From Haliotis rufescens (lineage: Eukaryota), in NCBI RefSeq assembly GCF_023055435.1, contig NW_025964223.1, positions 45,384,001 to 45,448,000 on the forward strand: a DNA stretch of 64,000 nucleotides. The letters are read 5' to 3'. The translations under genes were made by a program, and so were the position numbers. Positions 17,991-57,439 of this stretch are shown here, piece after piece. The notes under the pieces were generated by a model, which made no database searches, had not been told where the DNA came from, and saw only the letters and a program-made list of their open reading frames with translations. The first letter of the stretch is position 1. Every line of letters begins with the position of its first letter.

Positions 17991-20900
17991 ATGAAATGGA
18001 CACAGGTCTTTTTCACTTTGAGTCTGACAGTAGGCGGTGTATACACTGACACTACTGTCACCATCCACCCTCAATGGCTGGCACAGGGAGGAAGCGCTCA
18101 CTATGATAGTAATAGATGGAACAAGCACAATAACCTGGATCAAGCATTCCTCATTCCAAAATGTCGGAGCATTCGGACTGATAGTGGACGCTGGAGTGAC
18201 AGAGATTATAACGGTCGTCTCTTCCTAGATGTGAGATCTACTTATGAATAATGCAAAATATTACTTCCAAATGAAAACTGTCACTAGTATTGTTCAATGA
18301 AATACTTGACACCATCAAATTGAAAAACCATTTATGGTGATAACGTAATGGTATATATTCATTAAAACAAACATTCGACATACGTTGAGAAGCTCTGCTA
18401 TTTAGATTAAACTCAGATTCATCAATATTAGAAAAAAAATTAATTTAAGTCTTAGAATTTCTCCACAACCTGTTATGAAAAAGATATTGTAAGTTTTTCA
18501 GGCACGTGTTGCCATATCTGTCTAGTGAACTGACAAGAATGGCGAAGGGAGAATAACAGGTCAAATATTGCCTAACAGGTTACAACAGAAATGAAAAAAA
18601 ATATCTAAAATGAGAAAATATTGAATTTAAAACTGTTCGTAATTAATTTCAAAACTTTGATGGTGTATTCTTTACTATTGACAATAACAACGAATATATC
18701 ACTTCTTGGTGCCATATTATGGCAGCTATTCAGAATGACAGTAAATGTCCGTGCAAATATGCATTGGTAAATGTTCACAACATGGCACGAAAGTGGAATA
18801 CACTTTTACTAATATAATAAGCATATTGGTTGTAGTGGCCAGAGGACCCAAACCGTAGTGGCTACCCTGACCCCAACCATCTGAAGAACGTCACCAAACA
18901 GAAGGAACTGTTCTCCGCGTACATTGAGAACATCAACAGTGGTTATGAGAACGACATGATCATGATGGCGGAAGGTAAGATTGTTCGATATGATGGCACT
19001 GTAGCCATGGCGGAACCCAACATAAGCGGATAAGGCCAAAACAAACCAATATAATGTTTACATCACCACCGTGTTATTCTGTTTGTTCGCTGGAAATTTG
19101 GTAGCAGACATCACTTGGGTAATCGTGAATACCATATTTGGGCCAGCATATTGATTGTCTATTGATTCCCATTGTTGGTTCATCGTCACTTGGTATGCAG
19201 AAGCCACGTAGTGAACCAACGTCCATTAAACCGAAATATCCTACTGCGAACTAGAACTTGCCTCATGTTAGACATTTTGTTTACTGTTTGTTTGTTATGT
19301 AACGTCGCTACATGACAGTGGTCTGTAAACAATAGGTACTATATATGGAAATACAATGTTAAAGAAAAATTGCACTGTAAATAAAAAACTTTCGCCGAAA
19401 GTGTATACGTATCGCAGATATTGAAGACTAGGATAAGAAAAGTGTAAGATGCATAAGTATTACTTTCTGCCCCGCGGAGATTCTGGGTAAGAATTGGTCC
19501 CCAACAATCTGTGTAAGGATCAGATTGTCAAGCTCTGTTGATAGCATGTCACTCTATCTCGACGGCGTAGATCGCTGCACAACTATTTGTTTAGGTACAA
19601 CAAAACGAAATATATTAACATTCTATGCCCAAGCATGTATTTTGTTATTCTTTAAAAGATAAATCACTTGTTCAAAATTATATTTCTGTCCGAAACATTT
19701 TTTATTCATTTTCTCACAGAATTCAGGAACAATGACAGAACATCGGTTGTGGTGCAGTAATGTCAGGAAATGTCACCCTATCTTGGATGTCACAGATATC
19801 ACATCAAGTCTCATTCATTCATGTATCAACCCATCTGTATAAAAAATTAATGCAGAAACTCACTAATGGTATCAGCTCTACAAGAGTTAAATACAATTCA
19901 TATTACGAGCGGACAAAAACAATCAATTTTACAAACCCTTTTTATAGCCTTATGAAGCCACCTTGCATTAAGTGAGTGAGCTGGGTTTAACGCCGCTTTT
20001 AACAGTATTCCAGCTATATCGCGGCGTGTCAGCATAATATGGGAGGAAAGCCCGAAGTGATGCAGGTCTCAGACTTTTACCACTTCGATGAAACCAACGA
20101 GCACGGATATGGTCCTGGCAAACCTAGAAACATAATCGGGGCGAACCGGGATTCGAACCCACAATGATAGGTTTCTGTCGTACCCAATGGACGCAACTCC
20201 TCATAGCGAATCGCGGCGCCTCAGAAGACTGAGCTACCAGTGCCCCCCTACTTATATATAACACAAAACTGATATCATTGGTTTAATGTGTGTCCTGATA
20301 AACAAAATGAAAGCCAACCTGCTTTAAAAAAAGGACTAAGATGACCATGACCTTGAACATGGTATTTAATTCATTCCTACACCAGTCATTTTTTTATTAC
20401 ATCATTATTTTATTTTAAATTTAAATTTTAATCATTCATATGTTTTCAAACTGTTTCATTTCAATTCATTTTTGCCAGAACATGTATTTGTTTAACAGTT
20501 TTACTCTTATGCTGTTGACAGCTCTGTTTTACCCGAGTTGGATAGACACGTCTGAACACGATGGTCATTTCCCAAACAATGTCGATGCTGCTGCAGAGTT
20601 CATGATGTTGATGGTGCAAGGAGTGTATGACTACACCAAAGGACAGATGGTTCCACCCTACTTTGAGCCCATAAATGAACCGGATGGTAAATGGCATATC
20701 CTGAATTTCACGACTATCAACATCTTTCACAAATTAGTTGCAGAGAAACTCCATGCCAGATTTAACATCAAAGTTGCTGGTCCTACACTAACCGAAGAAA
20801 CTGGACATTCAGATGTAAACGACTTTTTGTATTGGCACAAAGTAGCAAATTTCATGGACGTCACTTTAGGCTATATTGACGTATTTTCTTTTCATGCGTA

Positions 20901-22011
20901 CAACACACTGGTTGCTTCGGGGAAATCTCACAATTTTACTGGAATAAATGAAGCACGTCTGATAGCATTTGTCGACCTGGTTGAAAACTATGCTTTTCAG
21001 AAGACCGGCAAGATTATCCCCCTTGTTATCAGTGAATATGGTCGCGGCGGCATCATAGGACGTGATAAATTTGCTCCATCGCCTATAGTGGACTTTTCAA
21101 CAATATACCAAGCCAATGCACACAGATTTACCCAACTAGGTCTCAGGGAATATATTGACAGAGCAGTGGTGTTTCTTTTAGCAAATGAAGAATGGCCAGG
21201 ACGTTATAGTCTCAACTATTCACTTTTTACACTTCAAGGAAACGCCACACGTATTGTCGACGTCTACGAGTTTTGGTATAAATTCACGTCAGACTTCTCC
21301 TTCTTAAGAACAACCAGCCAATATGATGGAGCGGAACGAACGGTGTCGCCGTTGGCAATGTCCAGTCCATTGATTAACGAAACCGTCATTCTCTTGCATA
21401 GCTATTCTCGGATGGCACAGGCGGTCAAGTTAGTTTTTCAAAAGAACTGGATCACACCAACCACTGGAGAAGCTACTTGTATCACACTCAAAGACGACTG
21501 GTTCCCAGTCATCACCTTCAATGAACCCATCAACATCCAGAAAACTCAAGGAGTGGTTGAACTTCCTCCTGAAGCAACGTGTCAGTTTACATTCAAGATC
21601 CCTTCCAACAAACTGCCTTCAGTCACTCTCAACGAAACCACATTCTACGGCGTTGATATGCTTTTACCAATCAAGGGCAACGTCACTGTGACAGCAATAA
21701 ATCTACCAAGTAGCCAATTTTACAGTGCAAGACTGAGAGTTTCAACCAGTTGGCCGATCAATGAAACAAACAGTGTATCACATCTTACCTTTAACCTCCA
21801 TCCCCTGGACTCTTTCTTTAAGCTGTATGATTCCGACAAGTTTACCAGCACCACCTATTGGCAAGTTTGGGAGTTTGTAGTCCCTACCTCACTGTTTGCC
21901 ACCGGGCCTAACCTGGTACAGGTTCACTTCTCCAAAAACATGACAGCGGGATATGTTTCTTCAGTAGCTCTTGTCGCAGCCAAGCTTGTCCCATCTGATT
22001 TGAAATCATGA
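17991..22011 (+). CDS. Secreted GH86-like beta-porphyranase/beta-agarase, copy A1, 622 aa; exons 17991-18230, 18836-18974, 20522-22011
   Basis: Exons join in frame through GT-AG introns (phase 0, then phase 1; 240+139+1490 nt). Signal peptide MKWTQVFFTLSLTVGGVYT. Exon 2 encodes WPEDPNRSGYPDP. Clan GH-A motifs YFEPINEPD, KVAGPT, IDVFSFHAY and VISEYG. The C-terminus ETTFYG...ARLRVS...WEFVVP...GYVSSVALV resembles the beta-porphyranase A C-terminal domain. ATTAAA at 22051. Confidence 0.88.
19972..20248 (-). mobile_element. tRNA-derived SINE (family 2) in intron 2 of A1
   Basis: The minus strand begins gggggcactggtagctcagtc (A box), contains gggttcgaatcccgg (B box) and ends in an (actc)n tail. 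It is absent at the equivalent site in A2 (ccattaag|tacttat, ~38290). Confidence 0.85.
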
Positions 22012-22115
22012 TAATGATAATAATTCTGACAAATTTCTCAAACTTTGATAATTAAACATATTCCACCAATGTGTCTAATGTCAGTTTTGATATATTCTTC
22101 TCAGGTCATCAGACA

Positions 22116-22165
22116 CGCAAGCACGCACGCACGCACGCTCACACGCACGCACGCACGCACGCACG
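22116..22165. repeat. (GCAC)n microsatellite downstream of A1 (paralogous copy at 40148-40203)
   Basis: Read directly from the sequence. Confidence 0.9.
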
Positions 22166-23594
22166 TGGTCTGGTGTTTCTGGTCTGATCCATTCTATATA
22201 CAGAACACCGTCCTGTAGGTGGACTATATCTGAGTCTGGTTTTTAACAACAAACGATGTTTTCAGAAAGTTTTGAAAGATACGTGAAGCTGATAACTGAC
22301 TCCGAAAATAAACCGCCCAGTATATAAGCAACGCATGAACATAATTTGGTTCTATGTCGGACACAAAATCATAAGAATTACGATGAACAGTCAAACAGTT
22401 ATCAAATGAGCAAACTCACAGTTACCGTGTGAGCAACCCTGGTAAGATGCAGTTCTTATGAAGCACAGGTATAAAAAAAACACTTTTGAGTACTTGATTC
22501 AGTATCGAAAAGTTCATCAGTATGTATGACGTGCATGTAACGGTCAGGATTTACCAGTCGGTTTTATAGTGCTATCAAACTGTGGTACCACAACACAGTT
22601 TTAAATGTATCCCGAGCTCAGACACAATATACAGACTCTGATCCGACCGCTTCTTGTTATAACCTCTCAATGCCGAGCACTACAGAGAGAGAAACAACAA
22701 GTCGCATCTGTTAACGTCTTTTGGTATGTCGCGTCCAGGAGATCGAACCACCGACCTTCTGCTCTCCGGATCTCTGGCCTGTTTGGTTACAAACCTTATA
22801 ACAACAACTAACCACCAGAAATGTTATATGCAGCAACCACGTGGTATGAAGAATAACATACAATACATTATTTTTGAAGATTGAGACCTTTGACTTTCAC
22901 GTTCCATCATTTATATCTCACCTGACGGAAAGTCAAGTATACTATCTGGAGCTGAAAATTTGTATGAGCGATCCCAGCTAGGGTATCTCTGAAAAGCGTA
23001 AACAAAATCCGATCCGATTATAAACCTTTGTGCCAACCAGTTAAACATTTCTGCACGTATCTTTATGGAATTGGATATGAAGGAAGTAAATGGTAGGCAA
23101 AAATAAAGTCTATGAACCTGAAACTGTGCCAAAATGATACCAGCAGTTGTTTCAAAAAAGTGTTTACAGAATTTCGATGCAATTAGAAACATGGACGCCA
23201 TGGTGGCCACACTGAAGAGTTCATCTTTTGACATTTATTCAGCCATTTCCACATGATGAAGTTTGATGAGCAGAATTTATGCTTCGACCTTGAACTTCAT
23301 GGGAAACATAAGCCGGAGTAGGTGCAAAAGATTCAAAATGCTGAAATTATGCCTGAATGACTTCACGTTTATTTAAGTTTGCTCAGAAAATCATGATATA
23401 CACTCATTAACAATGTTGCCAAAATGTTTGTTTTCCTTTCCCTGGAGCCTATTACACCCCCCCCCCCCCCCCCCCCCCCCTATATTTAGAGGCATATGTC
23501 CAAAAGAAATTTAATGTTCATCTATTTCACCGTATGTGATTACCAGATTGATATTCCTAGAGCGAGGGGCAATTCGTTGTCCAGGGTTCCATCT

Positions 23595-23805: not shown

Positions 23806-23918
23806 GTCGTAAAGAACAACGATTGCATATTATGTTAAGACAACAAACATGGAAAGCACATAGGTTTTTTTATTGTTTTTTAGATCAGTTTCATATTCCA
23901 TTATGTATTGGCTTTTAG

Positions 23919-24540
23919 CTCATAACTGGGCAAGTTGGACGAAGCAGTCCGAACATATATATATATATATATGGAGTATATGACAATACCAAAGGAGAGA
24001 ACCCGCCCTACTTCGATCCCATAAATGAACCGGACACTAAGACTGACATCTGAAATTTTACTTTTGCCACTTCCACAAATTATTGCCAGATTTAACATTA
24101 AAGTGGCTGGTCCCACACTGCAGATAAAACAGTGATACTTAATGGAGCCAATGCAAAAATATCCAGGACGTGATAGTCTGAACTATTCACTTTCACTTTC
24201 AAAGAAATGCCACAGGTACATGTATGGTGGACGTTCTTCGAGTTTTGTACAAATTCACGTCAGACTACTCCTTTTTCGAACTACCAGCCAGTATTATGCA
24301 CAGGAACGAACCATGTCGAGGTTAGCACAACGAAATTGGCACAAACTGTGACTGTAAAGACGACAGGATCAAACCAGCCACTGGATGAGCTACCTGCGTC
24401 ACCATCAAGGACAACTGTATCTCATCGTAACCTTCAACGGGCCCTTTAACATACAGAAAACACAAAGAATGGTTGAACTTCCTCATGAGGCAAGGCCCCC
24501 TCACACAAACTACAAAGTGCCACTCTCATTGAAACCTCAT
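23919..24540 (+). pseudogene. Old, internally deleted GH86-like exon-3 pseudogene (psi1)
   Basis: Acceptor ttttag|ctcataactgg. Recognisable codons for GVYD.TKG..PPYFDPINEPD, RFNIKVAGPTL, YPGRDSLNYSL and MVELPHEA, with stops and frameshifts. The nucleophile region is deleted and an (AT)n tract replaces part of the exon. Confidence 0.85.
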
Positions 24541-33117: not shown

Positions 33118-36100
33118 ATGAAATGGACACAGGTCTTTTTCACTTTGAGTCTGACAGTAGGCGGTGTATACACTGACACTACTGTCACCATCAATCCTCA
33201 ATGGCTGGCACAGGGAGGAAGCGCTCACTATGATAGTAATAGATGGAACAAGCACAATAACCTGGATCAAGCATTCCTCATTCCAAAATGTCGGAGCCTC
33301 CGGACTGATAGTGGACGCTGGGGTGACAGAGATTATAACGGTCGCCTCTTCCTAGATGTGAGACCTACTTCTGAATAATGCCAAATATTACTTGCAAATG
33401 AAAACTGTCACTAAAGAACTGTCGGAAATGCTAGAAAACTGCTTTTGTGGCTTTATTTAATAAATACGAGTCATAGAACTATAAAAAGAGCATATCTCAA
33501 AATAACGCGAATTGCCCTAATCTAGCCTGTCCTAACTGCCACTGTGATTACCCTTTAAATGTACTTTTACAGGTAAAATGATGATACACTTAGAAAATAT
33601 TGTCTGTTGTCATGCATGTATAAAATGGCCTATAACCTGAATTTATTACCTAACACCTAACCCGAGGTGAAGTCCTCACACAGTCCCGTGCATTCTCCCA
33701 GGTGCAAATGTCACCGAGTTGGGGGTGGTCTCAGAATATTGCTGTTATTGTACTTAAATGACATGCGTTGATGAGGTAGCAATTAAGGATATGTACTGCA
33801 TTATATTTGCTTGGAAACATGATGGACTAGTTAAGAGCTTTGAAACGGGATGAGTATTGAAGGTTGAGGTTTTGGAATCCAGAAGTATTTGTTGTTCTAC
33901 AGATGGTTTCTTGGGGTAGCATTTATCGCCGCTGATGACGTATATGAATCTGTACTTTTGAATGTTGTGTTATGTCCCGTCACGAACCCTGTACATTTAG
34001 CCAAGATAGACACAACGGGGTTGAGCTCACAATGTCTGACTGCCGTACGTAAGACAACGTAACCGTGTTGTGCCGCCAGCACATATGTCTTGTACTTTAC
34101 TGGTTTCTCATTCAGCCGAATTTCCTCCATGATCCTTATGATCTGAAGTCGACCAATGTCATATATTCCTGTATGGTCGCCTTCAGACTAATCATGGTTT
34201 GTGCGACAGTATCTGATTCCCGGACGTTATATTAACTGGCGTTATCCATGACAATCACACTGACGTTGTTTAAAATGGACAATAGCTGAAGTTCCAACCA
34301 GTCTATGAACACATCACCTCCTATAATTTCCTTATGAAAATCACCAGTTTTCTTTTCCGCCTCGAAAACTAGCACACATCTATCAATTAGCCCAATACCA
34401 TGGGTTGCAGCGTGCAAAACAATGACACGATTACCTTTACCTGATGGTACCATGGGTGCTTTTTGTCCATCTGCCAATAGCCACATGTAGTCAGTGGAAT
34501 GATTCACCAAGGTAAATTATCTGGACACCTTGACTGTGATTGTTATGAATGGTTCGGAGATAATGTGACCTCATAGACAGGATGAAATATTTTCCCCTGA
34601 AAAGTGCTCGGTCATCGCGACGCGCAGTGTATCGAAATCCCATCTCTTGGAGAGCAATAGTTAGTGCAGTCCGGGAAACATTAATTGTATCTTTAATTCC
34701 TCCCAAATTCTACTTCAAGTCAGGGTTACCTTCTGCTCATAAAGCTTGTACACTATACGCCTAATCACCCTGTATCAAAGCTGTCTAATATCCTTTTACG
34801 CCCCAGCCCTATACCTGTTTTGTATTCTTATCATACCGTAGTCTTGATGGTATGAATTGAAAACACCATAGCTTGGGCAGTTCGGTAATTCAACCTCTCT
34901 CAATTAATAAATGGTTTCCCATTATCTCTCTAAAGTGTAAAGAACTTGTATGCATTTCCAAGTACAGATTCCATAATTATGATGTACCTTGGTTATGGCT
35001 ATGCAAGTGTAATGTAACATGCATCATGGGAGCAATGTTAACAACAAAAAACGCAGCGTCATTTTGTCATTTTAGAAGATGCACATCTAGATTTTTTTCA
35101 AAATGATTTTAGTGTGTTGAGCAGATGTTTTATGAAGACGACATTATTATCATTGTAACGGCGTCACGTGCGCATATTTCTATAGTCCGTTTCAGACTGC
35201 CATCGTTGGACTTATAAATGTGAGCTTCCTGTTTTCGTTCGAATTTGTCTCCTGTAAACTTGTCGATAGGACTCCTTGTGACTGAAATACTTCAAACCAC
35301 AGGTGTGGCGATCGGTAGTTATTCCATATTTCAATAACAACAGTCTGTGAAAAATTATATATCTTTTTAACAAAAAAGCAGTTTTCTAGCATTTCCGACA
35401 GTGCTTTAGTATTGTTCAAGGAATTATTTGACATTATCAAATTGAAAAGCCAGTGATGGTGATAACGTAATGGTATATATTCAATAAAAACAAAGTTTCA
35501 ACATACTTGGAGTCACTCTGCTATTTAGATTAAACTCAGATTCTTCAATATTAGAAAAAACAAATTCATTTATGTCTTAGGATTTCTCCAAAACCTGTTA
35601 CGAAAAAGATATTTTAAGTTCTTAATGCACGTGTTGCTATATCTGTCAAGTGAACTGACAAGAATTGCGTAGGGAGAATAACAGGTCAAATATTGCCTAA
35701 CAGAAATGAAAACAAATATCTAAAATGAGAAAATATTGAATTGCGAATTGTTCGTAATTAATTTCAAAACTTTGATAGTGTATTCTTCACCATTGACAAT
35801 AACAGCGAACAATGTCACTTCTTGACGCCATATTATGGCAGCTATTCAGGCTGACAGTAAATGTCCGTGCAAATATGCATTGATAAATGTTCACAAAATG
35901 GCACCAAGTGGAAAACACCTTTACCAATCTAATAAGCATATATATTGTAGTGGCCAGAGGACCCAAACCGTAGTGGCTACCCTGACCCCAACTATCTGAA
36001 GAACGTCACCAAACAGAAGGAACTGTTCTCCAAGTACGTTGAGAACATCAACAGTGGTTATGAGAACGACATGATCATGATGGCGGAAGGTAAGATTGTT

Positions 36101-39100
36101 CGATATGATGGCACTGTAGCCATGGCGGAACCCAACATAAGTGGATAAGGCCAAAACAAACTAATCTAATGTTTACATCACCACCGTTTTATTCTGTTTG
36201 TTCGCTGGATTTTTGGTAGCAGCCATCACTTGGGTAATGCTGGATTCAATATTTGGGCCAACATCTTGATTGTCTATTGATTCCAATTGGTTTCCATTAA
36301 TGCGACGAGAACCCACTGTTGGTTCATCGTCACTTGGCATGCAGAAGCCCAGTAGTGAACCAACGTCCCTTAAACCAAAATATCTTACTGCGAACTAGAA
36401 CTTGCCTGATTGTAGAGATTTTGTTTACTGTTTGTCTGTTGTTTAACGTCGCAACATGACAGTGGTCTGTGAACAATCGCTACAATATATGGGAATACAA
36501 TGTTAAAGACAGAATGCAATGTAAATAAATATCATCAGCCGAAAGTTTATACGTATCGCAGATATTGAAGAAAAGGATAAAAAATGTATGATGCATTAGT
36601 ACTACTTTCTATCCTGCGGAGATTGGTCCCCAACAATCTGTGTAAGGATCAGCTTGTCAAGCTCTGTTGATTGCGTATCACTCTATCTCGACGGCGTAGA
36701 TCGCTGCTCTTAATATCAGCCACTAGTTTATTTGGTTACAGGTCGCCGTCGAGGACCTGGGATTTCGCTAAGTGCCGCGTTAAGCAACGAACATGTATTA
36801 CTCCTCATACGAGATTTGGAGATACGCGAGGACAATAACGTCTCTTTATTACTTCATGCTTGAGTTCGTGAGGTAATTTAACTGACTCAAACTTCAGCAA
36901 CTGCTGGTAGAGAACGTCGATTATCCTTATCTACATTTTAGGGGAGCTTTGGGGAACAGTTACTTGAGGAAGTAGATCTGATGTATGGAGCTCATCCAAC
37001 GTCGCTCCTTCTAGGCGACCTCAGTTGCAAATACCAAGTAGATTTGGTTTGGTCTATCACATCGATAACACTTTCCATCACATAAAATACTCACATCCTT
37101 GAGTATTTGATTTTTGGTGTCTCCCTATCCATTTCGTGACTCAAAATAATTTTAAAAGCAACCCTTCTCCAATATAGTAAAATGTTTATGTTGAAGTTAA
37201 AAGTATGATTCATTAACCTTAAAGTCTCCGTCGAGGACCTGGGATTTCGCCGAGTGCCGAATTAAACAGCAAACAATTACTACTCCTTATGAGACAATAA
37301 TGTCTCTTTATTACTTCATGCGTAAATTAATCAGAGTTCCCGAGATAAAACTCAGTGAAACTTCAGCAACTGGCGTCAGAAAATGTCCCTTGCCCTCACG
37401 AACGTATTGGGGGAAACTCGGGAAATAGTTCACTGAGGACATAGATATGATATGTGGAGCTCAAAGAACAAATGGTGGTGGTATGCTTCACACCAAAACT
37501 AAACTGAAAAATATATACTGTTTTAGAGAAGATAACGCAGAGGCTAATAATTTGAATTAATATTATCAGTAATTGTATTCACATTATAACTAGAATAAAA
37601 CTGTTTGTTTAGATATGACAAAACTAAATATTAGTATATAAACTGTCTATGCTGAAGCGATATCCATATATAATTAGCATGTATTTTATCTTCTAAAATC
37701 GACAAATCACTCGCTGAAAAGTTTGATTTTGTCCGTAGCCATTTTATCCAATTTCTCTAAGAAAAATCAGAAAAACAAAACTAAACATTGGTTCTGGTGC
37801 AATAATGTCAGGAAATGTCACCCAACCTGGGATGTCACAGATATCACGTCTTGTCAAGAGTCAAAGAAATATCATATTACCAACGGTTCCTTTGACACAG
37901 CTGTCTACGGTTCAGCCTAGTTCGTATAAGCCCATACTGTCCCTGTCCCTCATAAGTGTCCCACAACTATTCACAATTCCTCCTTGAAGATCCAGGTTAA
38001 AACTGCTCTTCAGCAACCATGTTGTCGTAAGGGGCAACTAACGGGATCGGGTGGTCGGGCTTGCTGACGTGGTTGATGCATGTCATCGTTTCCCAATTGC
38101 ACAGGTCGCTGCTCATGATGTCAAACAGGATTGTCTGGGGCGCTACACAATACGAAAATATATAAACACAAAGTTATAATTCAATATTGATTATCAAGTT
38201 ATTTATGTAAGGATATTGGATAAATGTTGGACAAAAACAAGCAATTTTACAAACCATTGTAATAGCCTAATGAAGCCACCTTCCATTAAGTACTTATATG
38301 TGACACAAAAATGATATCATACGTTTAATGTGTTTCCTGATAAACAAAATGAAAGCCAACCTGCTTTAAAATAGAGACTAAGATGACCATGACCTTGAAC
38401 ATGGCATATATTTCCTTTCTAAACCAGTCATTACATCATTATTTTATTTTCAATTTAAATTTTAATCATTCATATGTTTTCAAACTGTTTCATTTCAATT
38501 CATTTTTGCCAGAACATGTATTTGTTTAACAGTTTTACTCTTATGCTGTTGACAGCTCTGTTTTACCCGAGTTGGATAGACACGTCTGAACACGATGGTC
38601 ATTTCCCAAACAATGTCGATGCTGCTGCAGAGTTCATGATGTTGATGGTGCAAGGAGTGTATGACTACACCAAAGGACAGATGATTCCACCCTACTTTGA
38701 GCCCATAAATGAACCGGATGGTAAACGGCATATCCTGAATTTCACGACTATTACCATTTTTCACAAATTAGTTGCAGAGAAACTCCATGCCAGATTTAAC
38801 ATCAAAGTTGCTGGTCCTACACTGACCGGACAAACAGGACATTCAGATATAAACGACTTTTTGTATTGGCACAATGTGGCAAATTTCATGGACGTCACTT
38901 TAGGCTACATCGACGTATTTTCTTTTCATGCATACAACTATCTCGTTGTTTCGGGGAAATTTCACAATTTTACTGGAATAAATGAAGCACGTCTGGTAGC
39001 ATTTGTCGACCTGGTCGAAAATTATGCTTCTCAGAAGACCGGCAAGATTATCCCCCTTGTTATCAGTGAATATGGTCGCGGCGCCGTCATTGGACGTGAT

Positions 39101-40045
39101 AAATTTGCTCCATCGCCTATAGTGGACTTTTCAACAATATACCAAGCCAATGCACACAGATTTACCCAACTAGGTCTCAGGGAATACATTGACAGAGCAG
39201 TGGTGTTTCTTTTAGCTAATGAAGAATGGCCAGGACGTTATAGTCTCAATTATTCACTTTTCACTCTTCAAGGAAAAGCAACACGTATTGTCGACGTCTA
39301 CGAGTTTTGGTACAAATTCACGTCAGACTTCTCCTTCATGAGAACAACCAGCCAATATGATGGAGCGGAGCGAACGGTGTCGCCGTTGGCAATGTCCAGT
39401 CCATTGATTAACGAAACCGTCATTCTCTTGCATAGCTATTCTCGGATGTCACAGGCGGTCAAGTTAGTTTTTCAAGAGGACTGGATCACACCAACCACTG
39501 GAGAAGCTACTTGTATCACCATCAAGGACGACTGGTTCCCAGTCATCACCTTCAATGAACCCATCAACATCCAGAAATCTCAAGGAGTGGTTGAACTTCC
39601 TCCTGAAGCAACGTGTCAGTTTACATTCAAGATCCCTTCAAATAAACTGCCTTCAGTCACTGTCAACGAAACCACATTCTACGGCGTTGATATGCTTTTA
39701 CCAATCAAGGGCAACGTCACTGTGACAGCAATAAATCTACCAAGTAGCCAATTTCACAGTGCAAGACTGAGAGTTTCAACCAGTTGGCCGATCAAAGAAA
39801 CAAACAGTGTATCACATCTTACCTTTAACCTCCATCCCCTGGACTCTTTCTTTAAGCTGTATGATTCCGACAAGTTTACCAGCACCACCTATTGGCAAGT
39901 TTGGGAGTTTGTAGTCCCTACCTCCCTGTTTGCCACCGGGCCTAACCTGGTACAGGTTCACTTCTCCAAAAACATGACAGCGGGATATGTTTCTTCAGTA
40001 GCTCTTGTCGCAGCCAAGCTTGTCCCATCTGATTTGAAATCATGA
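33118..40045 (+). CDS. Secreted GH86-like beta-porphyranase/beta-agarase, copy A2, 622 aa; exons 33118-33357, 35951-36089, 38556-40045
   Basis: Exon sizes and phases identical to A1, intact ORF, NEP and SEYG motifs retained. AATAAA at 40084. Confidence 0.88.
33414..35406 (-). mobile_element. IS630/Tc1/mariner-superfamily DNA transposon (defective transposase) in intron 1 of A2
   Basis: TIRs of ~32 bp (aagaactgtcggaaatgctagaaaactgcttt / aaagcagttttctagcatttccgacagtgctt). TA duplicated at 33412-13 and 35407-08, with the empty site cacTAgtattg in A1. Minus-strand DDE remnants IIYLGES, PSGKGNRVIVLHA, VIVMDNAS and HCELNP. Confidence 0.93.
37985..38140 (+). mobile_element. SINE-like interspersed repeat core (family 3); other diverged copies at ~15858, 19475, 31455, 36615, 50980, 55270, 60120, 60965
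   Basis: Recurrent gtcgtaagg.gcaactaacgggatcgggtggtc.ggct.gctgac.tggttga...gctcatgat.tca..ca.(t)ggattgtctgg motif. Confidence 0.65.
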
Positions 40046-40163
40046 TAATGATAATAATTCTGACAAATTTCTCAAACTTTGATAATAAAAACATATTCCA
40101 CCAATGTGTCTAATGTAAGTTTTGATATATTCTTCTCAGGTCATCAGACACGCAAGCACGCAA

Positions 40164-40202
<39 letters not shown>

Positions 40203-42045: not shown

Positions 42046-42186
42046 NNNNNNNNNNNNNNNNNNNNNNNNNNNNNNNNNNNNNNNNNNNNNNNNNNNNNNN
42101 NNNNNNNNNNNNNNNNNNNNNNNNNNNNNNNNNNNNNNNNNNNNNNNNNNNNNNNNNNNNNNNNNNNNNNNNNNNNNNNNNNNNNN
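42046..42186. other. Assembly gap (N run)
   Basis: 141 N. Confidence 1.
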
Positions 42187-43451: not shown

Positions 43452-44110
43452 CTCATAACTGGGCAAGTTGGACGAAGCAGTCCGAACATGGAGGTAAATT
43501 CCCAAACAACTCGATGCTGCAGTTGCATTCATGATACTGATATGCAGGGAGTATATGACAATACCAAAGGAGAGAACCCGCCCTACTTCGATCCCATAAA
43601 TGAACCGGACACTAAGACTGACATCTGAAATTTTACTTTTGCCACTTCCACAAATTATTGCATGATTTAACATTAAAGTGGCTGGTCCCACACTGCAGAT
43701 AAAACAGTGATACTTAATGGAGCCAATGCAAAAATATCCAGGACGTGATAGTCTGAACTATTCACTTTCACTTTCAAAGAAATGCCACAGGTATGGTGGA
43801 CGTTCTTCGAGTTTTGGTACAAATTCACGTCAGATTACTCCTTTTTCGAACTACCAGCCAGTATTATGCACAGGAACGAACCATGTCGAGGTTAGCACAA
43901 CGAAATTGGCACAAACTGTGACTGTAAAGACGACAGGATCAAACCAGCCACTGGATGAGCTACCTGCGTCACCATCAAGGACAACTGTATCCTATCGTAA
44001 CCTTCAACGGGCCCTTTAAAATACAGAAAACACAAAGAATGGTTGACCTTCCTCATGAGGCAAGGCCCCCTCAGACAATCTTCAAAGTGCCACTCTCATT
44101 GAAACCCCAC
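43452..44110 (+). pseudogene. Old, internally deleted GH86-like exon-3 pseudogene (psi2, duplicate of psi1)
   Basis: Near-identical to 23919-24540, but it retains the SEH.G.FPN segment that psi1 has lost to an (AT)n tract. Confidence 0.85.
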
Positions 44111-44838: not shown

Positions 44839-47800
44839 ATGAAATGGACACAGGCCTATTTCGCTTTGAGTCTGATTACAGGCGGTGTGTACAGTGACAC
44901 GACGGTGACGATCTACCCTCAGTGGCTGGCACAGGGAGGTAGAGTTCGCTATGAGAGTGACAGGTGGAACAAGCACAATGGCCTGGAACAGGAGTCCCTT
45001 ATTGCAAACTGTCGGAGCATTCGGACTGACAGTGGGCGCTGGATGAACAGAGATCTAAATGATCATCTCTTCCAAGATGTGAAATTTTCTTTCCAATTCG
45101 ATTTTTTTACCTTGTACTTCATATATTAGACAGTGCTTTATGTCTTTATGTCATTAGGATAAACATTCATGAGCCTACACGTGGAGGTTCTGGGTAGCGT
45201 AAGTCCGCAACAACCAGTGGGCGCTGGATACACGAAGATTATAGTCTCTTTAAAGAAGTGAGATTTCTTTCTAACTCAATTCTGTATGTTGTCCCAACAC
45301 GTCACATATTAGACAGAAACTGATGGTTTACATTTGCTCATACTGTAATATCGCAGTTATGGTTTCAAAAGTACGTTTTGACAGTAATGTTACATGTATT
45401 GCAAACAGACATTACTTGACAAATATATTGCTATGGTGATATTGCTCAGATGCATGATGGTGTTGGGATAAAATTGAATGTTGAGATCAACCTCCAGCTA
45501 AGGCAAAAGACACCATGTTTAAGAGTCAATGTCTATATTTCGTTGGGATATACAATAATTCTAAGATGTCCCATGTTCATCTCAGACAAGACAAGTGATG
45601 TAATAAAGACTGATGTGGAGAAACCTACATGTAGGCCAATAGCATTAGTGAGTGGGTATGGTTTTACGTCGCTTTTAGCAATATTCCAGCAAAAGCACGG
45701 CGGGGGACACCAGAAATGGGCTTTACACATTGTGCCCATGTCGGGAATCGAACCCGGTCTTCGGCGTGACGAGTGAAATTGTTTACATGTTTATTGTTTG
45801 ATATTAAGTAACAAATGAGCATCTTTGGAATATAACTCTTGCATTTTGTACACAATTAAATGTATTAATACTGTGATACATGTTGTTTCAGTGAACCGTC
45901 ATTGGCATGAAATGGGTTGTATATAATATTAACTTGTTCATTGTATAGTGGCCAGAGGACGCACACCGTAGCGGCTACCCCGACCCCAACTACCTAAAGA
46001 ACATCAGCAAGCAACAGGAACTATTCTCCAACTACCTTGCTGACATTGACAGTGGCTATAAGAACGAAATGATCATGGTGATGAATGGTAAGAATAATCG
46101 GAAACGACCAGTTATGCGATAGTTAACATAATTAAAACGGCCGTGGGTGTGTTTATATTTCTTTATCACGTGCCACAACAATAATAGCAGCAAAAAGTCC
46201 AAACACGATGTAAGAAATAAATTCGAGAATCAGGCATAGACAGAAGAGTGTGTTTTTGTTCCATCACATGCTGTTTAACGCCGAACCTAGCAATATTCCA
46301 GCTATATTGCGGCGGCTGCTCCCTCCATCATCCAGTGTAAGTGAATGTCAAGATCACGCAAGGGTTGACATTCTTCTGTGGAAAGGAAAGAGGAAGATGA
46401 TGTGCAGATGCATGTGGCAAGTAATCAGGTTAAATTTCAAGTTCTATCTTTTGGCAATCGGTTGTAGGAAAAGCCAAAACTACTAGACGTACTCTGCGGG
46501 GAAGGTACAAATGATTGGTGTGAGAGTTATGTAGACATGTAAGATGTCTTGAAAAGCTAGTTATTGAAGGCAATTACACAATCTATGTATAAGATAATCA
46601 GTTTGGCGTGTTGTTTCTCCTCTTAGAAGATTAACTTTGTCTTTTAAGCTGAAATACATGCGTATACTCTTGTAGAAGAAGCATAGATGCATTTCAATCA
46701 GTGTCATGTTTCGTTCTATTTGCATATTTCAGCTCTCCACTGGCCAGACTGGATGAACCAATCCGAACATGAGGGCCAATTCCCAAACAACATCGATGCT
46801 GCTGCAGAGTTTATCGTGTTGATGCTACAAGGAGTCTATGACTACACACAAGGTCACATACCGCCATACTTCGAGGTCGTCAACGAACCAGATGTTAAAG
46901 AGCAAATAATGAATTTCACGACCACTGTAGCCTTATTCCACAAAACAGTTGCCGAGAAACTCCATTCTAGGTTTAACATCAAAGTGACTGGCCCGACAAT
47001 GACGGGATATAACACAGTAGTAGACAGGAACGACTTTTCGTTCTGGACGAAACTGGTCGATTTCATGGACATCACTTTAGACTATTTAGACGTGTTTTCA
47101 TTCGTACAACTCACTTATTGTTTCGGGGAACTCTCACCGATTTACTGGTATAAATGAAGCACGCCTAGTAGCTTTTGTCGACCTGCTTGAAAACTATGTT
47201 CATCAAAAGACGGGAAGAATTATTCCTCTAATTATCAGTGAATATGGTCGCGGGAAAGTGACGGGAATTAGCTCAACAGCTCCATCTGGGATAGTCGACT
47301 TTGCAACAATATACCAGTCTAATGCCCATAGATTCACCCACCTTGGTTTGAGAGAATACATTGATAGAACAGTGGTTTTTCTATTGTCCAATCAACAATA
47401 TCCAGGACATGATAGTCTCAACTGGTCACTTTTCACCCGCCAAGGAAACGCCACACGTATTGTCGATGTCTTCAAATTCTGGTACAATTTCACGTCAGAG
47501 TATTCCTTCATCAGAACCGCCAGCCAATGTGAAGTACAAGAACGAACCGTGTCACCATTAGCAGTGTCAAGTTCCTTGCATAATGAAACTGTCATTCTCT
47601 TACACAGTTATTATCAACAGTCACAGGACGTCAAGCTAGTTTTTCAAGAAGACTGGATCACACCAACCACGGGAGAAGCTACTTGCATCACAATTAAGGA
47701 CAACTGGTATCCAGTCATCACCTTCAACGAACCCTTAGACATCGGTTAAACTCGGGGAATGGTTACACTCAAGACCCCTTCAAGCCAATTACCTAAAGTC

Positions 47801-48193
47801 ATTCTCAATGAAACAACATACTACGGAAGTGATATCATTATACCTATCAAGGACAGCATTGCTGTGACGACCATATTACTTCCAAAAGATGAATTCGACA
47901 GCGCAAGACTGCGAATTTCAACAAGTCTTCCCATCAATGAAACAAACAGTCTGTCATCTGTTACCATTAACCACCAACCTCTTAATTTCTTTTACAAGCT
48001 GTTCGACTCAGACAAACAGAACAGTCAAATCTACAACTTCATGGATGTTTGGGAGTTTGATGTCCATTCCACCTTGTTGAACACCACTTCTATCACGGTC
48101 CAGGTTAACTTCTCCAACAAGCAGGCTAAAGGATACGTGACTTCGGTAGCCCTGGTCACAGCCAAGCTCCTCCCATCCGACACTAAAAAATGA
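44839..48193 (+). pseudogene. GH86-like copy B2, recently inactivated; exons 44839-45078, 45949-46087, 46733-48193
   Basis: Compared with B1: a 5-nt deletion at ~47097 (gtgttttc[ttttc]attcg) causes a frameshift, GAC>TAA creates a stop at 47747-47749, and a 30-nt deletion removes PPEATCRYTF near 47768. Confidence 0.9.
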
Positions 48194-50918: not shown

Positions 50919-51296
50919 TTCCAGGGACAATGAAATGCACACTGGTCTATTTCAGTCTGATGAAAGGTACCTCGCAACCTATGCTGATGGTCAGAGGCAA
51001 CTTGATGGATCGGGTGGTCAGGCTCGGGGACTTTGCCGATGGCTTGTAAACGTACCCTTGCAGCGGGATCGTTGCTCATAATATCAATGACTGGATTGTT
51101 CATACTCGATTATTTCAGGCTGCGACATGAAATGGACACTGGTCTTTCTCGCCTTGAGCTGATAATACATCATCGACACGCTTTCAACCAAGCCACCGAG
51201 CTGCCGAACATAATACATTTAAGTATTTATTTTGCAGGACACAGGGACGTTGTGTTAGCTGTGACAGTGACAGGTTGAACAAACACAATGGCCTGA
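50919..51296 (+). pseudogene. Decayed GH86-like exon-1 remnants
   Basis: ttccagggacaatgaaatgcacactggtctatttcagtctga (~50919), atgaaatggacactggtctttctcgccttgagctga (~51128) and acagggacgttgtgttagctgtgacagtgacaggttgaacaaacacaatggcctg (~51241). Confidence 0.7.
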
Positions 51297-51788: not shown

Positions 51789-51974
51789 GTGAGTGAGTGA
51801 GTGAGTGAGTGAGTGAGTGAGTTTGATTTTACGCCGCTTTCAGCAATATTCCAGCAATATCACGGCGAGGGACACCAAAAATAGGCTTCACACATTGTAC
51901 CCATGTCGGGAATCGAACCCGGGTCTTTGGCGTGACGAGCGAACGCTTTAACCACTGGGCTACCCGACCGCCCC
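51789..51974 (-). mobile_element. Full-length tRNA-derived SINE family 1 with ttacaga TSD
   Basis: Minus strand reads ggggcggtcgggtagcccagtggttaaagcg...gggttcgattcccg, with an (actc)n tail. ttacaga on both flanks. The empty site is in block 2 (~32248). Confidence 0.9.
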
Positions 51975-53529: not shown

Positions 53530-56500
53530 ATGGAATGGGCACTGGTCTTTTTCACTTTGAGTCTGACAGTAGGCGGTGTATACACTGACACTACTGTCAC
53601 CATCCACCCTCAGTGGCTGGCACAGGGAGGAAGCGCTCACTATGACAGTAATAGATGGAACAAACACAATGGTCTGGATCGAACATCCCTCATTCCCAAC
53701 TGTCGGAGCATTGGGACTGATAGTGGGCGCTGGAGTAACAGAGATTATAACGGTCGTCTCTTCCAAGACGTGAGATCAACTAATGAATATTACTAACCAT
53801 AACTTGCAAATGTAAGCTGTCAGTAGCATTGTTCAAAGAAACATCTGACATTATCAAATTGAAAAGCCAATGATGGGATAATGTAATGGTATAAATCATT
53901 TAATACAACCATTCACGAATTTGCTGTTTGCATTAAACTCAGATTCATCAATATTATTCAACAAATTCATTTAAGTCTTAGAATGTTTCAATATCAGTAT
54001 TTCAGGCAGGTGTTACTATATCTGTCTAGTGAACTGACAAGAATGCTGCAGTGCACGTAACAGGTCACATATTGCCCAACAGGTTACAACAGAAATGAAA
54101 ACAAATATTTTTAATGAGAATATTTTGGATTTTGAACTGGTCGTAATTAATTTCAAAACTATAAGGTTTATTTTTTACCAATGACAATGACAACGACTAT
54201 ATCACTTCTTGAGAGCAGATATGGCTGAAATATTGCCAATGTGACGTCAATTAATAACTCACTCACTCACTCTTGAGAGCAAATGTCCATGCAAAAACGC
54301 ATTGACGAATGTTATCTTATCTAATAGGTATTTTAATTGTAGTGGCCAGAGGACCCAAGCCGTAGTGGCTACCCTGACCCAAACTATCTGAAGAACGTCA
54401 CCAAACAGCAGGAACTGTTCTCTGCGTACATTGAGAATATCAACAGTGGTTATGAGAACGACATGATCATGATGGCTGGAGGTAAGAATGGTCGATATGA
54501 TGGCACTGTAGCCATTCCAGAACTCACTCACATGAGAGGATAAGGCCAAAACAAACCAAAACTATTTTTTAAATCACGTCCGTGTTATTCTGTTACCTCT
54601 GGGGCAATGCTGGTTACCATCTTTTGGCCCACATCATGTTTGCCCATTGATGCCAATCCGTGCGACATGAGCCAATATCAGATCATCGTCACTTGCCGAG
54701 CAGAAGCCCAGTAGTGAACTTCTATTCTCAAAGGCTGCCCACATTTAGAAATTGATTATCAACACTATGCCAGTCTCAATTAATGAGGCTTTGCTGTAGT
54801 CCTATGTGGGCCCACTTGTTTTGAGCACTATATAAGACGGGGGCTAGGTGGGCCCACATATTTAAAAATGGTTATCAGCACTAAACCTACCTAAGAAGAT
54901 CTAATGACATATGACACTCAACTTATGACAACTATCTACTTTCCGAAATGTGGGCACACAAATAAAATAAAGTGGGCCCACATTTTGGGAAAACTAGGTG
55001 AGTTATTAATTTAATTATCATGAACCGTTTTTAATTTTCTGCAAGTTACGGATGGAAAGATAAATATATAATGTATTCAAACATTTAATTAAGAATACGG
55101 TTTACCTTTGGGATTAGATTGCCAATTAATAGCTGGACCAACGTCAACGTACAGCGTGACTGACGCCATTTCTCGCAAATACGAAAACAATGGGGATAGC
55201 TCCCGATTGAAATTAGAGTGACCTCCCTTTCCCAATATGAACCATTGATAATGCTCCAATAATATAACGGGTTAAAACTGGTCTTCAGCAAGCCACCACA
55301 ATATGATTGGATGGTCGGGCTCGCTGATTTACTTGATGCATGTCATCGTATTGCAAATGCATACTTTTTAGATCGATGCTCATGATATCAATCATTGCAT
55401 TGTCTGGGGCGTGAAACAATATGCAAATCAATAAACACAGATTTGTAATTCAATACTAATTACCAAGTTATTTATGTAAGGATATTGTGAACAGGTCAGA
55501 CTAACACAAGCAATTTATTAAACTCTTCTATTGGCCTGACTTGCATGGAACACATATGTGACACTCAAATGATATGACGCTTTTACTGTACTTCCCGATA
55601 AACTACAATTGTGTTTAATTCTTTTCTACATCATTCATTCTTCATTACATCATAAATGCCTTGATGTTTAAAGTTTAATTCTCAGATGTTTTTGGGGCGG
55701 TCGGGTAGCCTAGTGGTTAAAGCGTTCGCTCGTCACGCCGAAGACCCGGGTTCGATTCCCGACATGGGTACAATGTGTGAAGCCCATTTCTGGTGTCCCC
55801 CGCCGTGATATATCTGAAATATTGCTAAAAGCGGCGTAAAACCATATTCACTCACTCACTCACTCAGATGTTTTCAAACTGTTTCACTTCTACTCATTTT
55901 TTACCAACAAAGTCATTAGTATCAATATTCACTCTTATGTTGTTGACAGGTCTTTATTACCCGAGTTGGATAGACACGTCTGAACACGATGGTCATTTCC
56001 CAAACAATGTCGATGCTGCTGCAGAGTTCATGATGTTGATGGTGCAAGGAGTGTATGACTACACCAAGGGACAGATGATGCCACCCTACTTTGAGCCCAT
56101 AAACGAACCGGATGGTAAATGGCGTATACTGAATTTCACGACTATCAACATCTTTCACAAATTAGTTGCAGAGAAACTCCATGCCAGATTTAACATCAAA
56201 GTTGCTGGTCCTACACTGACCGAAGAAACTGGACATTCAGATATAAACGACTTTTTGTATTGGCACAAAGTGGCAAATTTCATGGACGTCACTTTAGGCT
56301 ATATTGACGTATTTTCTTTTCATGCGTACAACACACTGGTTCTTTCGGGCAAATCTCACAATTTTACTGGAATAAATGAAGCACGTCTGGTAGCATTTGT
56401 CGACCTGGTTGAAAACTATGCTTCTCAGAAGACCGGAAAGATTATCCCCCTTGTTATCAGTGAATATGGTCGCGGTGCTGTCAAAGGATTTAACAAATAT

Positions 56501-57439
56501 GCCCCATCACCGATAGTAGACTTTTCAACAATATACCAAGCCAATGCACACAGATTTACCCAACTAGGTCTCAGGGAATACATTGACAGAGCAGTGGTGT
56601 TTCTTTTAGCAAATGAAGAATGGCCAGGACGTCATAGTCTCAATTATTCACTTTTCACTCTTCAAGGAAACGCCACACGTATTGTCGACGTCTACGAGTT
56701 TTGGTACAAATTCATGTCAGGCTTCTCCTTCATGAGAACTACCAGCCAATATGATGGAGCAGAACGAACGGTGTCGCCGTTGGCAATGTCCAGTCCATTG
56801 ATGAACGAAACGGTCATTCTCTTGCATAGCTATTCTCAGAAGTCACAGGCGGTCAAGCTAGTTTTTCAAGAGGACTGGATCACACCAACCACTGGAGAAG
56901 CTACTTGTATCACACTCAAGGACGACTGGTGTCCAGTCATCACCTTCAATAAACCCATCGACATCCAGAAATCTGAAGGAGTGGTTGAACTTCCTCCTGA
57001 AGCAACATGTCACTTTAGCTTCAAGATCCCTTCCAACAAACTGCCTTCAGTCACTCTCAACGAAACCACATTCTACGGCGCTGATATGCTGATACCAATC
57101 AAGGGCAACGTCACTTTGACAACAATAAATCTACCAAGTAGCCAATTTCACAGTGCAAGACTGAGAGTATCAACCAGTTGGCCGATAAATGAAACAAACA
57201 GTGTATCATATCTTACCTATAACCTCCACCCCCTTGACTCTTTCTTGAAACTGTTTGATTCCGACAAGTTTGTCAGCACCACCTATTGGGAGGTTTGGGA
57301 GTTTGAAGTCCCCACATCCATGTTTGTCACTGGGGCTAACCAGGTACAGGTCCACTTCTCTAACAACATGACAGCGGGATACGTTTCTTCAATTGCTCTT
57401 GTCGCAGCCAAGCTTGTTCCATCTGATATGAAGTCATGA
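53530..57439 (+). CDS. Secreted GH86-like beta-porphyranase/beta-agarase, copy A3, 622 aa; exons 53530-53769, 54343-54481, 55950-57439
   Basis: Signal peptide MEWALVFFTLSLTVGGVYT. Same exon sizes and phases (240+139+1490). NEP and SEYG intact. ATTAAA at 57472. Confidence 0.88.
55693..55862 (+). mobile_element. Full-length tRNA-derived SINE family 1 in intron 2 of A3, with a 12-bp TSD
   Basis: A box tagcctagtgg, B box ggttcgattcc, (cact)n tail. ctcagatgtttt at 55681 and 55863. Confidence 0.92.

What the first reader, a model, noticed from the sequence alone, without database searches (positions are those of the whole stretch)
17991..57439. Animal-encoded tandem array of secreted GH86-like agarase/porphyranase genes: a candidate endogenous red-seaweed digestion system of bacterial origin
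Seen in sequence: four intact three-exon genes plus pseudogenes, with signal peptides, GT-AG introns at identical positions, polyadenylation signals, and animal SINEs inside their introns. They are therefore host chromosomal genes rather than bacterial contamination. Established knowledge: NEP after beta-4 and SE(Y/F)G at beta-7 are the clan GH-A catalytic glutamates. The EDPxRxGYxDP segment and the C-terminal (E/K)xx(F/Y)YG...ARLR...GYVSSVAL sandwich resemble bacterial GH86 enzymes such as Bacteroides plebeius porphyranase BpGH86A and Pseudoalteromonas AgrA. Agar/porphyran breakdown is normally attributed to marine bacteria and gut microbiota. Inference: a bacterial gene was horizontally acquired, domesticated and amplified in an algae-grazing mollusc.
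Basis: partly seen in the sequence, partly recalled or inferred. Interest (0 to 1): 0.95.

Follow-up and report, generated by a model that had tools for sequence, protein, structure and literature searches.

The report
Abalone-encoded GH86 seaweed-galactanase gene array
An abalone chromosome carries a tandem array of intron-containing genes for secreted enzymes of glycoside hydrolase family 86, so far characterised only from bacteria that break down red-seaweed agar and porphyran, which suggests the animal itself may digest these sugars; no activity or expression was measured here.

Summary
Window 17991-57439 holds four intact three-exon genes of 622, 623, 622 and 622 aa. It also holds one near-complete pseudogene and two decayed fragments. 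All genes have GT-AG introns at identical positions, AATAAA 33-40 nt after the stop codon, and host SINE copies in their introns. The assembly gap at 42046-42186 is intergenic, and its flanks are colinear with the paralogous repeat unit.

GH86 membership is well supported. A profile of the family hits only GH86 structures in the PDB (E 1e-48 to 4e-34, nearly full length). An AlphaFold model matches all GH86 structures at TM about 0.8, against 0.48 or less for other families. Both catalytic glutamates are conserved. Pairwise dN/dS between paralogues is about 0.3.

The interpretation needs correction in three ways.
- The genome, inferred to be Haliotis rufescens, carries about 55 uninterrupted copies in several arrays. 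The scan's first readers had flagged other arrays in this genome.
- The family also occurs in mussels, a pearl oyster and a chiton, and forms one deep molluscan clade.
- The nearest relatives in the tree are two protist transcripts. No bacterial donor is resolved.

Horizontal acquisition is therefore inferred, ancient and not specific to abalone. RefSeq already names these genes "beta-porphyranase A-like". I found no paper describing them.

The parts
17991..18230 (+). G1 (A-type) exon 1: start codon, putative signal peptide, first barrel strand
   Evidence: an in-frame ATG also lies upstream at 17970
18836..18974 (+). G1 exon 2 (139 nt; ends in phase 1)
20522..22011 (+). G1 exon 3: most of the (alpha/beta)8 barrel with the NEP and SEYG motifs, plus two beta-sandwich domains and the stop codon
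23934..24522 (+). Decayed GH86 gene fragments (psi-a)
   Evidence: three tblastn pieces at 32-52% identity
25262..29039 (+). G2 (B-type, 623 aa): exons 25262-25501, 26387-26525, 27547-29039; 67% identical to the A type
33118..40045 (+). G3 (A-type, 622 aa): exons 33118-33357, 35951-36089, 38556-40045; introns enlarged to 2593 and 2466 nt
42046..42186 (.). Assembly gap, intergenic, inside an insertion in the second repeat unit
43460..44092 (+). Decayed GH86 gene fragments (psi-b), the counterpart of psi-a in the duplicated unit
44839..48193 (+). psiC: B-type pseudogene with three exons recognisable; 5-bp deletion, in-frame TAA and 30-bp deletion in exon 3
53530..57439 (+). G5 (A-type, 622 aa): exons 53530-53769, 54343-54481, 55950-57439
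55694..55865 (+). tRNA-derived host SINE in G5 intron 2; other copies or parts at 19971-20026, 26085-26215, 45647-45777 and 51802-51974
22051..22056 (+). Poly(A) signal after G1; equivalent signals start at 29078, 40084, 48229 and 57472
   Evidence: offsets 40, 39, 39, 36 and 33 after the stops

Best explanation
The region is part of a large host-encoded multigene family of GH86 glycoside hydrolases in an abalone genome, inferred to be Haliotis rufescens. Each gene has three exons. It encodes a protein of about 622 aa with an N-terminal signal peptide, an (alpha/beta)8 barrel carrying the GH-A acid/base Glu (NEP) and nucleophile Glu (SEYG), and two C-terminal beta-sandwich domains. The array grew by segmental duplication of a unit made of an A-type gene, an old fragment and a B-type gene. 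The copies are under purifying selection and one copy has recently died. The most likely mechanism, by inference, is a retaining endo-beta-1,4-galactanase secreted into the gut lumen. There it would depolymerise agaran-type sulfated galactans (agarose, porphyran, funoran) of red algae, independently of gut bacteria. The family entered an early mollusc or an earlier eukaryote long ago, most probably from bacteria, gained two introns, and then expanded strongly in Haliotis.
For: Gene models, splice sites and poly(A) signals. Sequence: the window's own exon 3 hits BpGH86A at E 2.7e-9 and BuGH86 at 1.5e-6. Profile: the family profile hits only the four GH86 sequences in the PDB, E 9.9e-49 to 4.3e-34, over profile positions 71-610. 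Fold: an AlphaFold2 model of the 91%-identical homologue P0001 (pLDDT 89, pTM 0.90) has all GH86 entries as its top seven Foldseek hits (E 8.8e-40 to 1e-35, TM 0.73-0.81, about 640-665 aligned columns). The next family, GH30, is at TM about 0.4. Catalytic residues: E152 and E279 of BpGH86A (the ORF in L071) align with NEP and SE[YF]G. N182 and E183 are invariant and E302 nearly invariant in 31 sequences. The equivalent E322 is the proven nucleophile of BuGH86 (PMC5849685). Selection: dN/dS is 0.27-0.31 in all six paralogue pairs. Host origin: host SINEs in the introns, a reverse-transcriptase/RNase H element and a MULE transposase in the flank, and a 63-Mb contig. Expansion: 85 matches in the genome, about 55 of them full-length exon-3 frames without stops, in arrays on seven contigs. 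Shared structure: deep paralogues at 38-48% identity have the same two intron positions and phases. Duplication blocks are 96.3%, 91.7% and 90.6% identical.
Against: No activity or expression data could be obtained. Identity to characterised GH86 enzymes is only 17-20%, so substrate cannot be transferred with confidence. The window genes themselves miss the Pfam cut-offs for BPA_C and Porphyrn_cat_1. Filter-feeding bivalves keep the family, which argues against a function tied strictly to grazing on macroalgae. The tree does not place the molluscan clade inside a bacterial clade.
Confidence: 0.7

Rival explanations
1. They are genuine host GH86-fold enzymes whose substrate is not an agaran. 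Candidates are other algal or microalgal galactans, carrageenan-type beta-1,4 bonds, or endogenous or dietary mucus glycans. The many paralogues would then reflect diversified specificities.
For: Identity to characterised enzymes is 17-20%. Paralogues within one genome range from 37% to 95% identity. The family is present in filter-feeding Mytilus and Pinctada. In BpGH86A the residue at the sulfate-pocket position is Ser. It aligns with Ala in A-type proteins and Ser in some other paralogues, rather than the Met of the agarase, but that alignment is unreliable.
Against: As far as I know, every characterised GH86 acts on agarans. BuGH86 and BpGH86A are documented in PMC5849685. The catalytic machinery and the three-domain architecture are fully kept.
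Confidence: 0.22
2. The family is an old eukaryotic GH86 lineage, either inherited vertically with massive loss or passed between eukaryotes such as protist to mollusc. It would not be a direct bacterium-to-mollusc transfer.
For: Molluscs plus two EukProt protist proteins (P0086; P0139 from the foraminiferan Bolivina argentea) form one side of a branch with 98% SH-aLRT support under a site-mixture model. Besides itself, the only hit of P0086 is a Mytilus protein, E 9.5e-26. The protist proteins share the SGRW...N-x-D-L motif with molluscs.
Against: The two protist rows are very long branches and the tree tool flags them. They come from transcriptomes that may hold contaminants. Bacteria hold hundreds of diverse lineages: 687 clusters at 50% identity and 267 loci in PVC phyla and Bacteroidota. 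The tree is unrooted.
Confidence: 0.2
3. The array is bacterial contamination or an assembly artefact.
For: Two N gaps lie in the window. Repeat units of 90-96% identity could be mis-assembled.
Against: The genes have GT-AG introns in conserved phases, poly(A) signals and intronic host SINEs with hundreds of genomic copies. GC content is about 40%, like the flanks. Annotated homologues exist in four other Haliotis species on chromosome-scale contigs.
Confidence: 0.01
4. It is a vertically inherited animal clan GH-A family such as GH30, GH39, GH5, GH59 or GH79.
For: There are weak sub-threshold Pfam hits to Cellulase (GH5), Glyco_hydro_cc and Glyco_hydro_39.
Against: All those hits are below the curated cut-offs. 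Foldseek gives TM 0.48 or less to GH30, GH39, GH51 and heparanase, against about 0.8 to GH86. The profile search of the PDB finds GH86 only.
Confidence: 0.02

Closest known systems
BuGH86, the beta-agarase of Bacteroides uniformis NP1 (PDB 5TA1/5TA0/5TA5), and Aga86A_Wa (PDB 8H97)
   Same: Same three-domain architecture of an (alpha/beta)8 barrel plus two Ig-like domains. TM is 0.79-0.80 over the whole chain. The nucleophile Glu lies in an I-S-E-Y context and the acid/base Glu in N-E-P.
   Different: Only 19-20% identity. The abalone genes are eukaryotic, with two introns, a eukaryotic signal peptide and many N-glycosylation sequons. They are not in a polysaccharide utilisation locus. Activity is untested.
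BpGH86A, the beta-porphyranase of Phocaeicola (Bacteroides) plebeius (PDB 4AW7)
   Same: It is the best direct sequence hit of the window's own exon 3 (E 2.7e-9). E152 and E279 align with NEP and SEYG. The C-terminal G-x-V-S-S motif is shared. A small residue (Ala or Ser) aligns with the Ser at the base of the sulfate pocket.
   Different: 17% identity. Alignment around the -2 subsite is uncertain, so porphyran specificity cannot be assigned.
Host-encoded algal-polysaccharide enzymes of abalone, for example the alginate lyase shown to be host-derived in H. discus hannai
   Same: An animal-encoded enzyme for a seaweed polymer that is usually credited to gut bacteria (PMC6181387).
   Different: A different fold, mechanism and substrate (a lyase acting on brown-algal alginate). 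I found no paper on a host GH86, agarase or porphyranase.

Membership tests
GH86 (CAZy glycoside hydrolase family 86, clan GH-A) | Significant sequence similarity to characterised GH86 enzymes over the catalytic and C-terminal domains | tested here: met
   (window exon 3: 4aw7 at E 2.7e-9, 5ta1 at 1.5e-6). (family profile: 8h97, 5ta1, 5ta0 and 4aw7 at E 1e-48 to 4e-34, with no other family at E <= 1e-3).
GH86 (CAZy glycoside hydrolase family 86, clan GH-A) | (alpha/beta)8 barrel followed by two Ig-like beta-sandwich domains | tested here: met
   The model is of homologue P0001, 91% identical to G1. The architecture is as described in PMC5849685.
GH86 (CAZy glycoside hydrolase family 86, clan GH-A) | Two catalytic glutamates: acid/base after strand 4 and nucleophile at strand 7 | tested here: met
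   NEP and SEYG are present in G1, G2, G3 and G5.
GH86 (CAZy glycoside hydrolase family 86, clan GH-A) | Pfam BPA_C (PF18040) and Porphyrn_cat_1 (PF18206) above the gathering score | tested here: inconclusive
   The window genes and P0001 do not reach these models. The Haliotis paralogue P0043 passes BPA_C at 44.5 bits against a cut-off of 26.2. Others come close.
GH86 (CAZy glycoside hydrolase family 86, clan GH-A) | dbCAN/CAZy GH86 HMM assignment | not testable with these tools
   No dbCAN library was on hand. NCBIfam gave no hit.
GH86 (CAZy glycoside hydrolase family 86, clan GH-A) | Hydrolysis of beta-1,4 bonds in agarose, porphyran or funoran | not testable with these tools
   This needs an enzyme assay.
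Horizontally acquired bacterial gene in an animal | Integrated in host chromosomal DNA with host gene features | tested here: met
Horizontally acquired bacterial gene in an animal | Patchy distribution among animals | tested here: met
   Named hits come only from Haliotis, Mytilus, Pinctada and Liolophura. This holds within the limits of a word-indexed search.
Horizontally acquired bacterial gene in an animal | Animal clade nested within a bacterial donor clade in a rooted tree | tested here: inconclusive
   Molluscs are monophyletic (100% support) but lie on their own long branch with two protist sequences. The trees are unrooted.
GH30 / GH39 / GH5 / GH79 (other clan GH-A families) | Best profile and fold match to that family | tested here: not met
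   Pfam hits are below the cut-offs. TM is 0.48 or less.

The most novel reading that the evidence does not exclude
Molluscs, and possibly some protists, carry an ancient and so far undescribed eukaryotic branch of GH86. In abalone it has expanded to about 55 genes with diversified specificities. This would give the animal a way, independent of its microbiota, to depolymerise agar, porphyran and related sulfated galactans of red algae.
Probability: 0.45. Interest if true: 0.85.

Novelty: new variant of a known kind. Interest (0 to 1): 0.74.

Why it matters
Breakdown of agar and porphyran is textbook bacterial chemistry. In abalone it is credited to gut bacteria (PMC5870069; PMC6181387). A host family of about 55 secreted GH86 genes under purifying selection would change how red-seaweed digestion by a farmed and ecologically important herbivore is understood. 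It makes the question of host versus microbiome directly testable. It offers eukaryote-expressible agarases or porphyranases. It also adds an old, intron-bearing and massively amplified case to the list of carbohydrate-enzyme genes that animals share with microbes.

Tried and rejected
The contigs of the unnamed ENA and Logan homologues (P0064, P0074, P0226) could therefore not be read. Intron positions in Mytilus, Pinctada and Liolophura could not be checked either.
Exons were used by reference, and the database homologue P0001 stood in for the full-length protein.
- The IQ-TREE mixture model on 106 rows did not finish. I used FastTree on all rows and the mixture model on 44 rows.
- NCBIfam gave nothing.
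- Pfam on the window genes gave only sub-threshold hits (CUB_2, Cellulase, Glyco_hydro_cc), which I read as noise or distant clan signal.
- Ten literature searches found no paper on an animal GH86, agarase or porphyranase gene.
- A weak resemblance to a B-type exon 1 at 60770-61105 was not significant.
- Mapping of the -2 subsite residue F77 of BpGH86A was too uncertain to use.
- Positive selection between G1 and G3 is not supported. Differences do cluster between the catalytic motifs, but dS is raised there too, and omega is 0.28.
Full report
**What is in the sequence**

A tblastn search with the best database homologue was refined by direct reading of the junctions. The homologue is P0001, named "beta-porphyranase A-like" from Haliotis cracherodii. 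This gives five three-exon gene copies on the + strand.

| Copy | Exon 1 | Exon 2 | Exon 3 | Product |
|---|---|---|---|---|
| G1 | 17991-18230 | 18836-18974 | 20522-22011 | 622 aa |
| G2 | 25262-25501 | 26387-26525 | 27547-29039 | 623 aa |
| G3 | 33118-33357 | 35951-36089 | 38556-40045 | 622 aa |
| psiC | 44839-45078 | 45949-46087 | 46733-48193 | broken |
| G5 | 53530-53769 | 54343-54481 | 55950-57439 | 622 aa |

- Exon lengths are 240, 139 and 1490 nt (1493 in G2).
- Intron 1 is phase 0 and intron 2 is phase 1.
- Donors are GTGAGA (GTGAAA in psiC) and GTAAGA, and all acceptors end in AG.
- The four intact copies have no in-frame stop.
- AATAAA or ATTAAA starts 33-40 nt after every stop.
- Each protein has 9-11 N-x-S/T sequons.

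psiC is 97.5% identical to G2 in exon 3. It carries a 5-bp deletion near 47094, an in-frame TAA near 47750 and a 30-bp deletion near 47768. Two much older fragments lie at 23934-24522 and 43460-44092.

**Array structure and the gap**

Self-comparison shows a segmental duplication of a unit made of an A-type gene, an old fragment and a B-type gene.
- 20249-23329 matches 38291-41361 at 96.3%.
- 23481-26914 matches 43014-46392 at 91.7%.
- 27194-30762 matches 46380-49879 at 90.6%.

G5 is a third A-type copy, about 91% identical to G1 and G3 in exon 3.

The assembly gap at 42046-42186 lies between the first two blocks, 2.0 kb after the G3 stop. Its left flank matches 23315-23436 of the first unit. 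The match resumes at the equivalent of 23481 after a SINE-like insertion next to the gap. The two sides are therefore colinear with the paralogous unit, and no exon or intron is affected. With units this similar, hidden copies cannot be excluded.

**Host or contaminant**

- GC content is about 40% throughout the window.
- A 172-bp tRNA-derived SINE lies in G5 intron 2 (Rfam tRNA hit). Copies or parts of it lie in the introns of G1, G2 and psiC.
- The same element has at least 380 candidate copies, 90-98% identical, on many contigs of the genome.
- The upstream flank holds a reverse-transcriptase/RNase H element and a MULE transposase.
- The window sits at 45.38 Mb of a 63,335,689-bp contig.
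They are 63,335,689, 1,438,139, 32,727,429 and 94,228,061 bp. I therefore infer that the genome is red abalone.

Contamination is excluded.

**What the proteins are**

- The window's own exon 3 hits the GH86 porphyranase BpGH86A (4aw7, E 2.7e-9) and the agarase BuGH86 (5ta1, E 1.5e-6).
- A profile of 31 family members (alignment A1) hits only GH86 entries in the PDB: 8h97, 5ta1, 5ta0 and 4aw7. E-values run from 9.9e-49 to 4.3e-34 over profile positions 71-610.
The full-length fold was predicted for P0001, 91% identical to G1, using A1. It gave pLDDT 89 and pTM 0.90.
- The top seven Foldseek hits are all GH86 structures, with E 8.8e-40 to 1e-35, TM 0.73-0.81 and about 640-665 aligned columns. 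GH30, GH39, GH51 and heparanase follow at TM 0.39-0.48.
- The published GH86 architecture is a barrel plus two Ig-like domains, and E322 is the nucleophile of BuGH86 (PMC5849685).
- The P. plebeius locus L071 gave me BpGH86A itself. Its E152 and E279 align with the NEP and SE[YF]G motifs of all the molluscan proteins shown except P0063.
- In A1, N182 and E183 are invariant and E302 is nearly so.
- The window genes miss the Pfam cut-offs, but paralogues pass BPA_C.

I consider GH86 membership established. The rival animal GH-A families were tested and not met.

**Are the genes functional?**

Pairwise Nei-Gojobori dN/dS on exon 3 is 0.27-0.31 for all six pairs. dS is 0.08 between G1 and G3, 0.15-0.18 to G5 and about 0.76 to G2. 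This indicates purifying selection.

The amino-acid differences between G1 and G3 do cluster between the two catalytic motifs. Synonymous divergence is raised there too, and omega is 0.28. This looks like uneven divergence or gene conversion, not positive selection.

**Family size and age**

In this 1.33-Gb genome the exon-3 protein finds 85 matches.
- By my count of that table, 61 matches cover essentially the whole exon, and 55 of these have no stop.
- They lie in arrays on C445 (39.93-40.11 Mb, 45.28-45.44 Mb and one copy at 5.9 Mb), C601, C599, C11, C190, C90 and C1.
- Some small-contig copies have identical scores and may be haplotype duplicates.
- The scan's first readers had already flagged several of these arrays on other DNA of this genome.
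- Deep paralogues at 38-48% identity, on C90 and C1, have the same two intron positions and phases. The introns therefore predate the Haliotis radiation of the family.

Named homologues outside Haliotis occur in five Mytilus species, Pinctada imbricata and the chiton Liolophura sinensis. No other animals appeared, within the limits of the word-indexed search.

**Phylogeny**

- A profile search of 1.84 billion representatives gave 687 hits.
- The genome-contig scan gave 267 bacterial loci, with identity of about 35% at most. Most are Planctomycetota, Verrucomicrobiota, Lentisphaerota, Kiritimatiellota and marine Bacteroidota, together with P. plebeius.
- In a FastTree of 106 rows and an IQ-TREE mixture-model tree of 44 rows, all molluscan sequences form one clade with 100% support.
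- The base of that clade is unresolved. It holds chiton, bivalve and at least three Haliotis lineages.
- The clade is not nested in any bacterial group.
- It joins, with 98% SH-aLRT support, two very long branches that come from EukProt protist transcriptomes. One is the foraminiferan Bolivina argentea.
- For one of these proteins, the only database hit besides itself is a Mytilus protein (E 9.5e-26).

A single old acquisition followed by vertical descent, duplication and loss fits best. The bacterial donor and even the direction of transfer are inferred from distribution only.

**Mechanism**

The following points are shown here:
- the fold;
- the catalytic pair;
- the secretory-type N-terminus, by inspection only;
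- the sequons;
- the purifying selection;
- the amplification.

The following are inferred: retaining endo-hydrolysis of beta-1,4-galactosidic bonds in agaran-type galactans in the gut lumen. The position of the sulfate-pocket Ser of BpGH86A aligns with Ala in A-type proteins and Ser in some other paralogues, not the Met of the agarase. This is a weak hint towards sulfated substrates.

**Novelty**

RefSeq's pipeline already names these genes "beta-porphyranase A-like", "beta-agarase-like" or "funoran endo-beta-hydrolase-like". Ten full-text searches found no paper on an animal GH86. Abalone studies attribute red-algal polysaccharide degradation to bacteria. I rate this a new, eukaryotic and massively amplified variant of a known enzyme family.

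Noticed in passing
window 21-7238: A large satellite array with a basic period of about 87 bp and higher-order periods of 171 and 258 bp. Copies are 66-82% alike. It is interrupted around 4056-4737.
   Followed up: partly
window 9736-11770: ORFs of a non-LTR-type retroelement (RVT_1 at E 8e-21; RNase_H at E 1.4e-8) in a stretch with extreme strand composition (GC skew -0.45, AT skew +0.29). A MULE transposase ORF follows at 12056-12721.
   Followed up: partly
window 14638-16090 and 49697-51215: An 84%-identical segment lies 2-3 kb upstream of both G1 and G5. It may be part of the A-type duplication unit or a shared regulatory or repeat element.
   Followed up: no
window 33358-35406: Intron 1 of G3 is about 2 kb longer than that of G1. 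The extra DNA holds a minus-strand ORF (34232-34510) that looks transposase-like by eye. It has no Pfam hit.
   Followed up: partly
window 61273-61450: A second assembly gap lies outside the finding. A Cys-rich ORF at 61639-61968 looks like a retroelement zinc knuckle but has no Pfam hit.
   Followed up: partly
P0063 (Haliotis asinina paralogue): This paralogue has Ala where the nucleophile Glu should be (S-A-Y-G). It may be a catalytically inactive family member.
   Followed up: no
P0086 and P0139 (EukProt transcriptomes; P0139 from Bolivina argentea): These protist GH86-like proteins group with the molluscan clade and share its SGRW motif. They may mark a wider eukaryotic GH86 lineage, or they may be contaminants or long-branch artefacts.
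   Followed up: partly
G000 contigs C445, C601, C90, C1: The contig lengths equal those recorded for Haliotis rufescens proteins. The window's genome is therefore most likely the red abalone reference assembly.
   Followed up: yes
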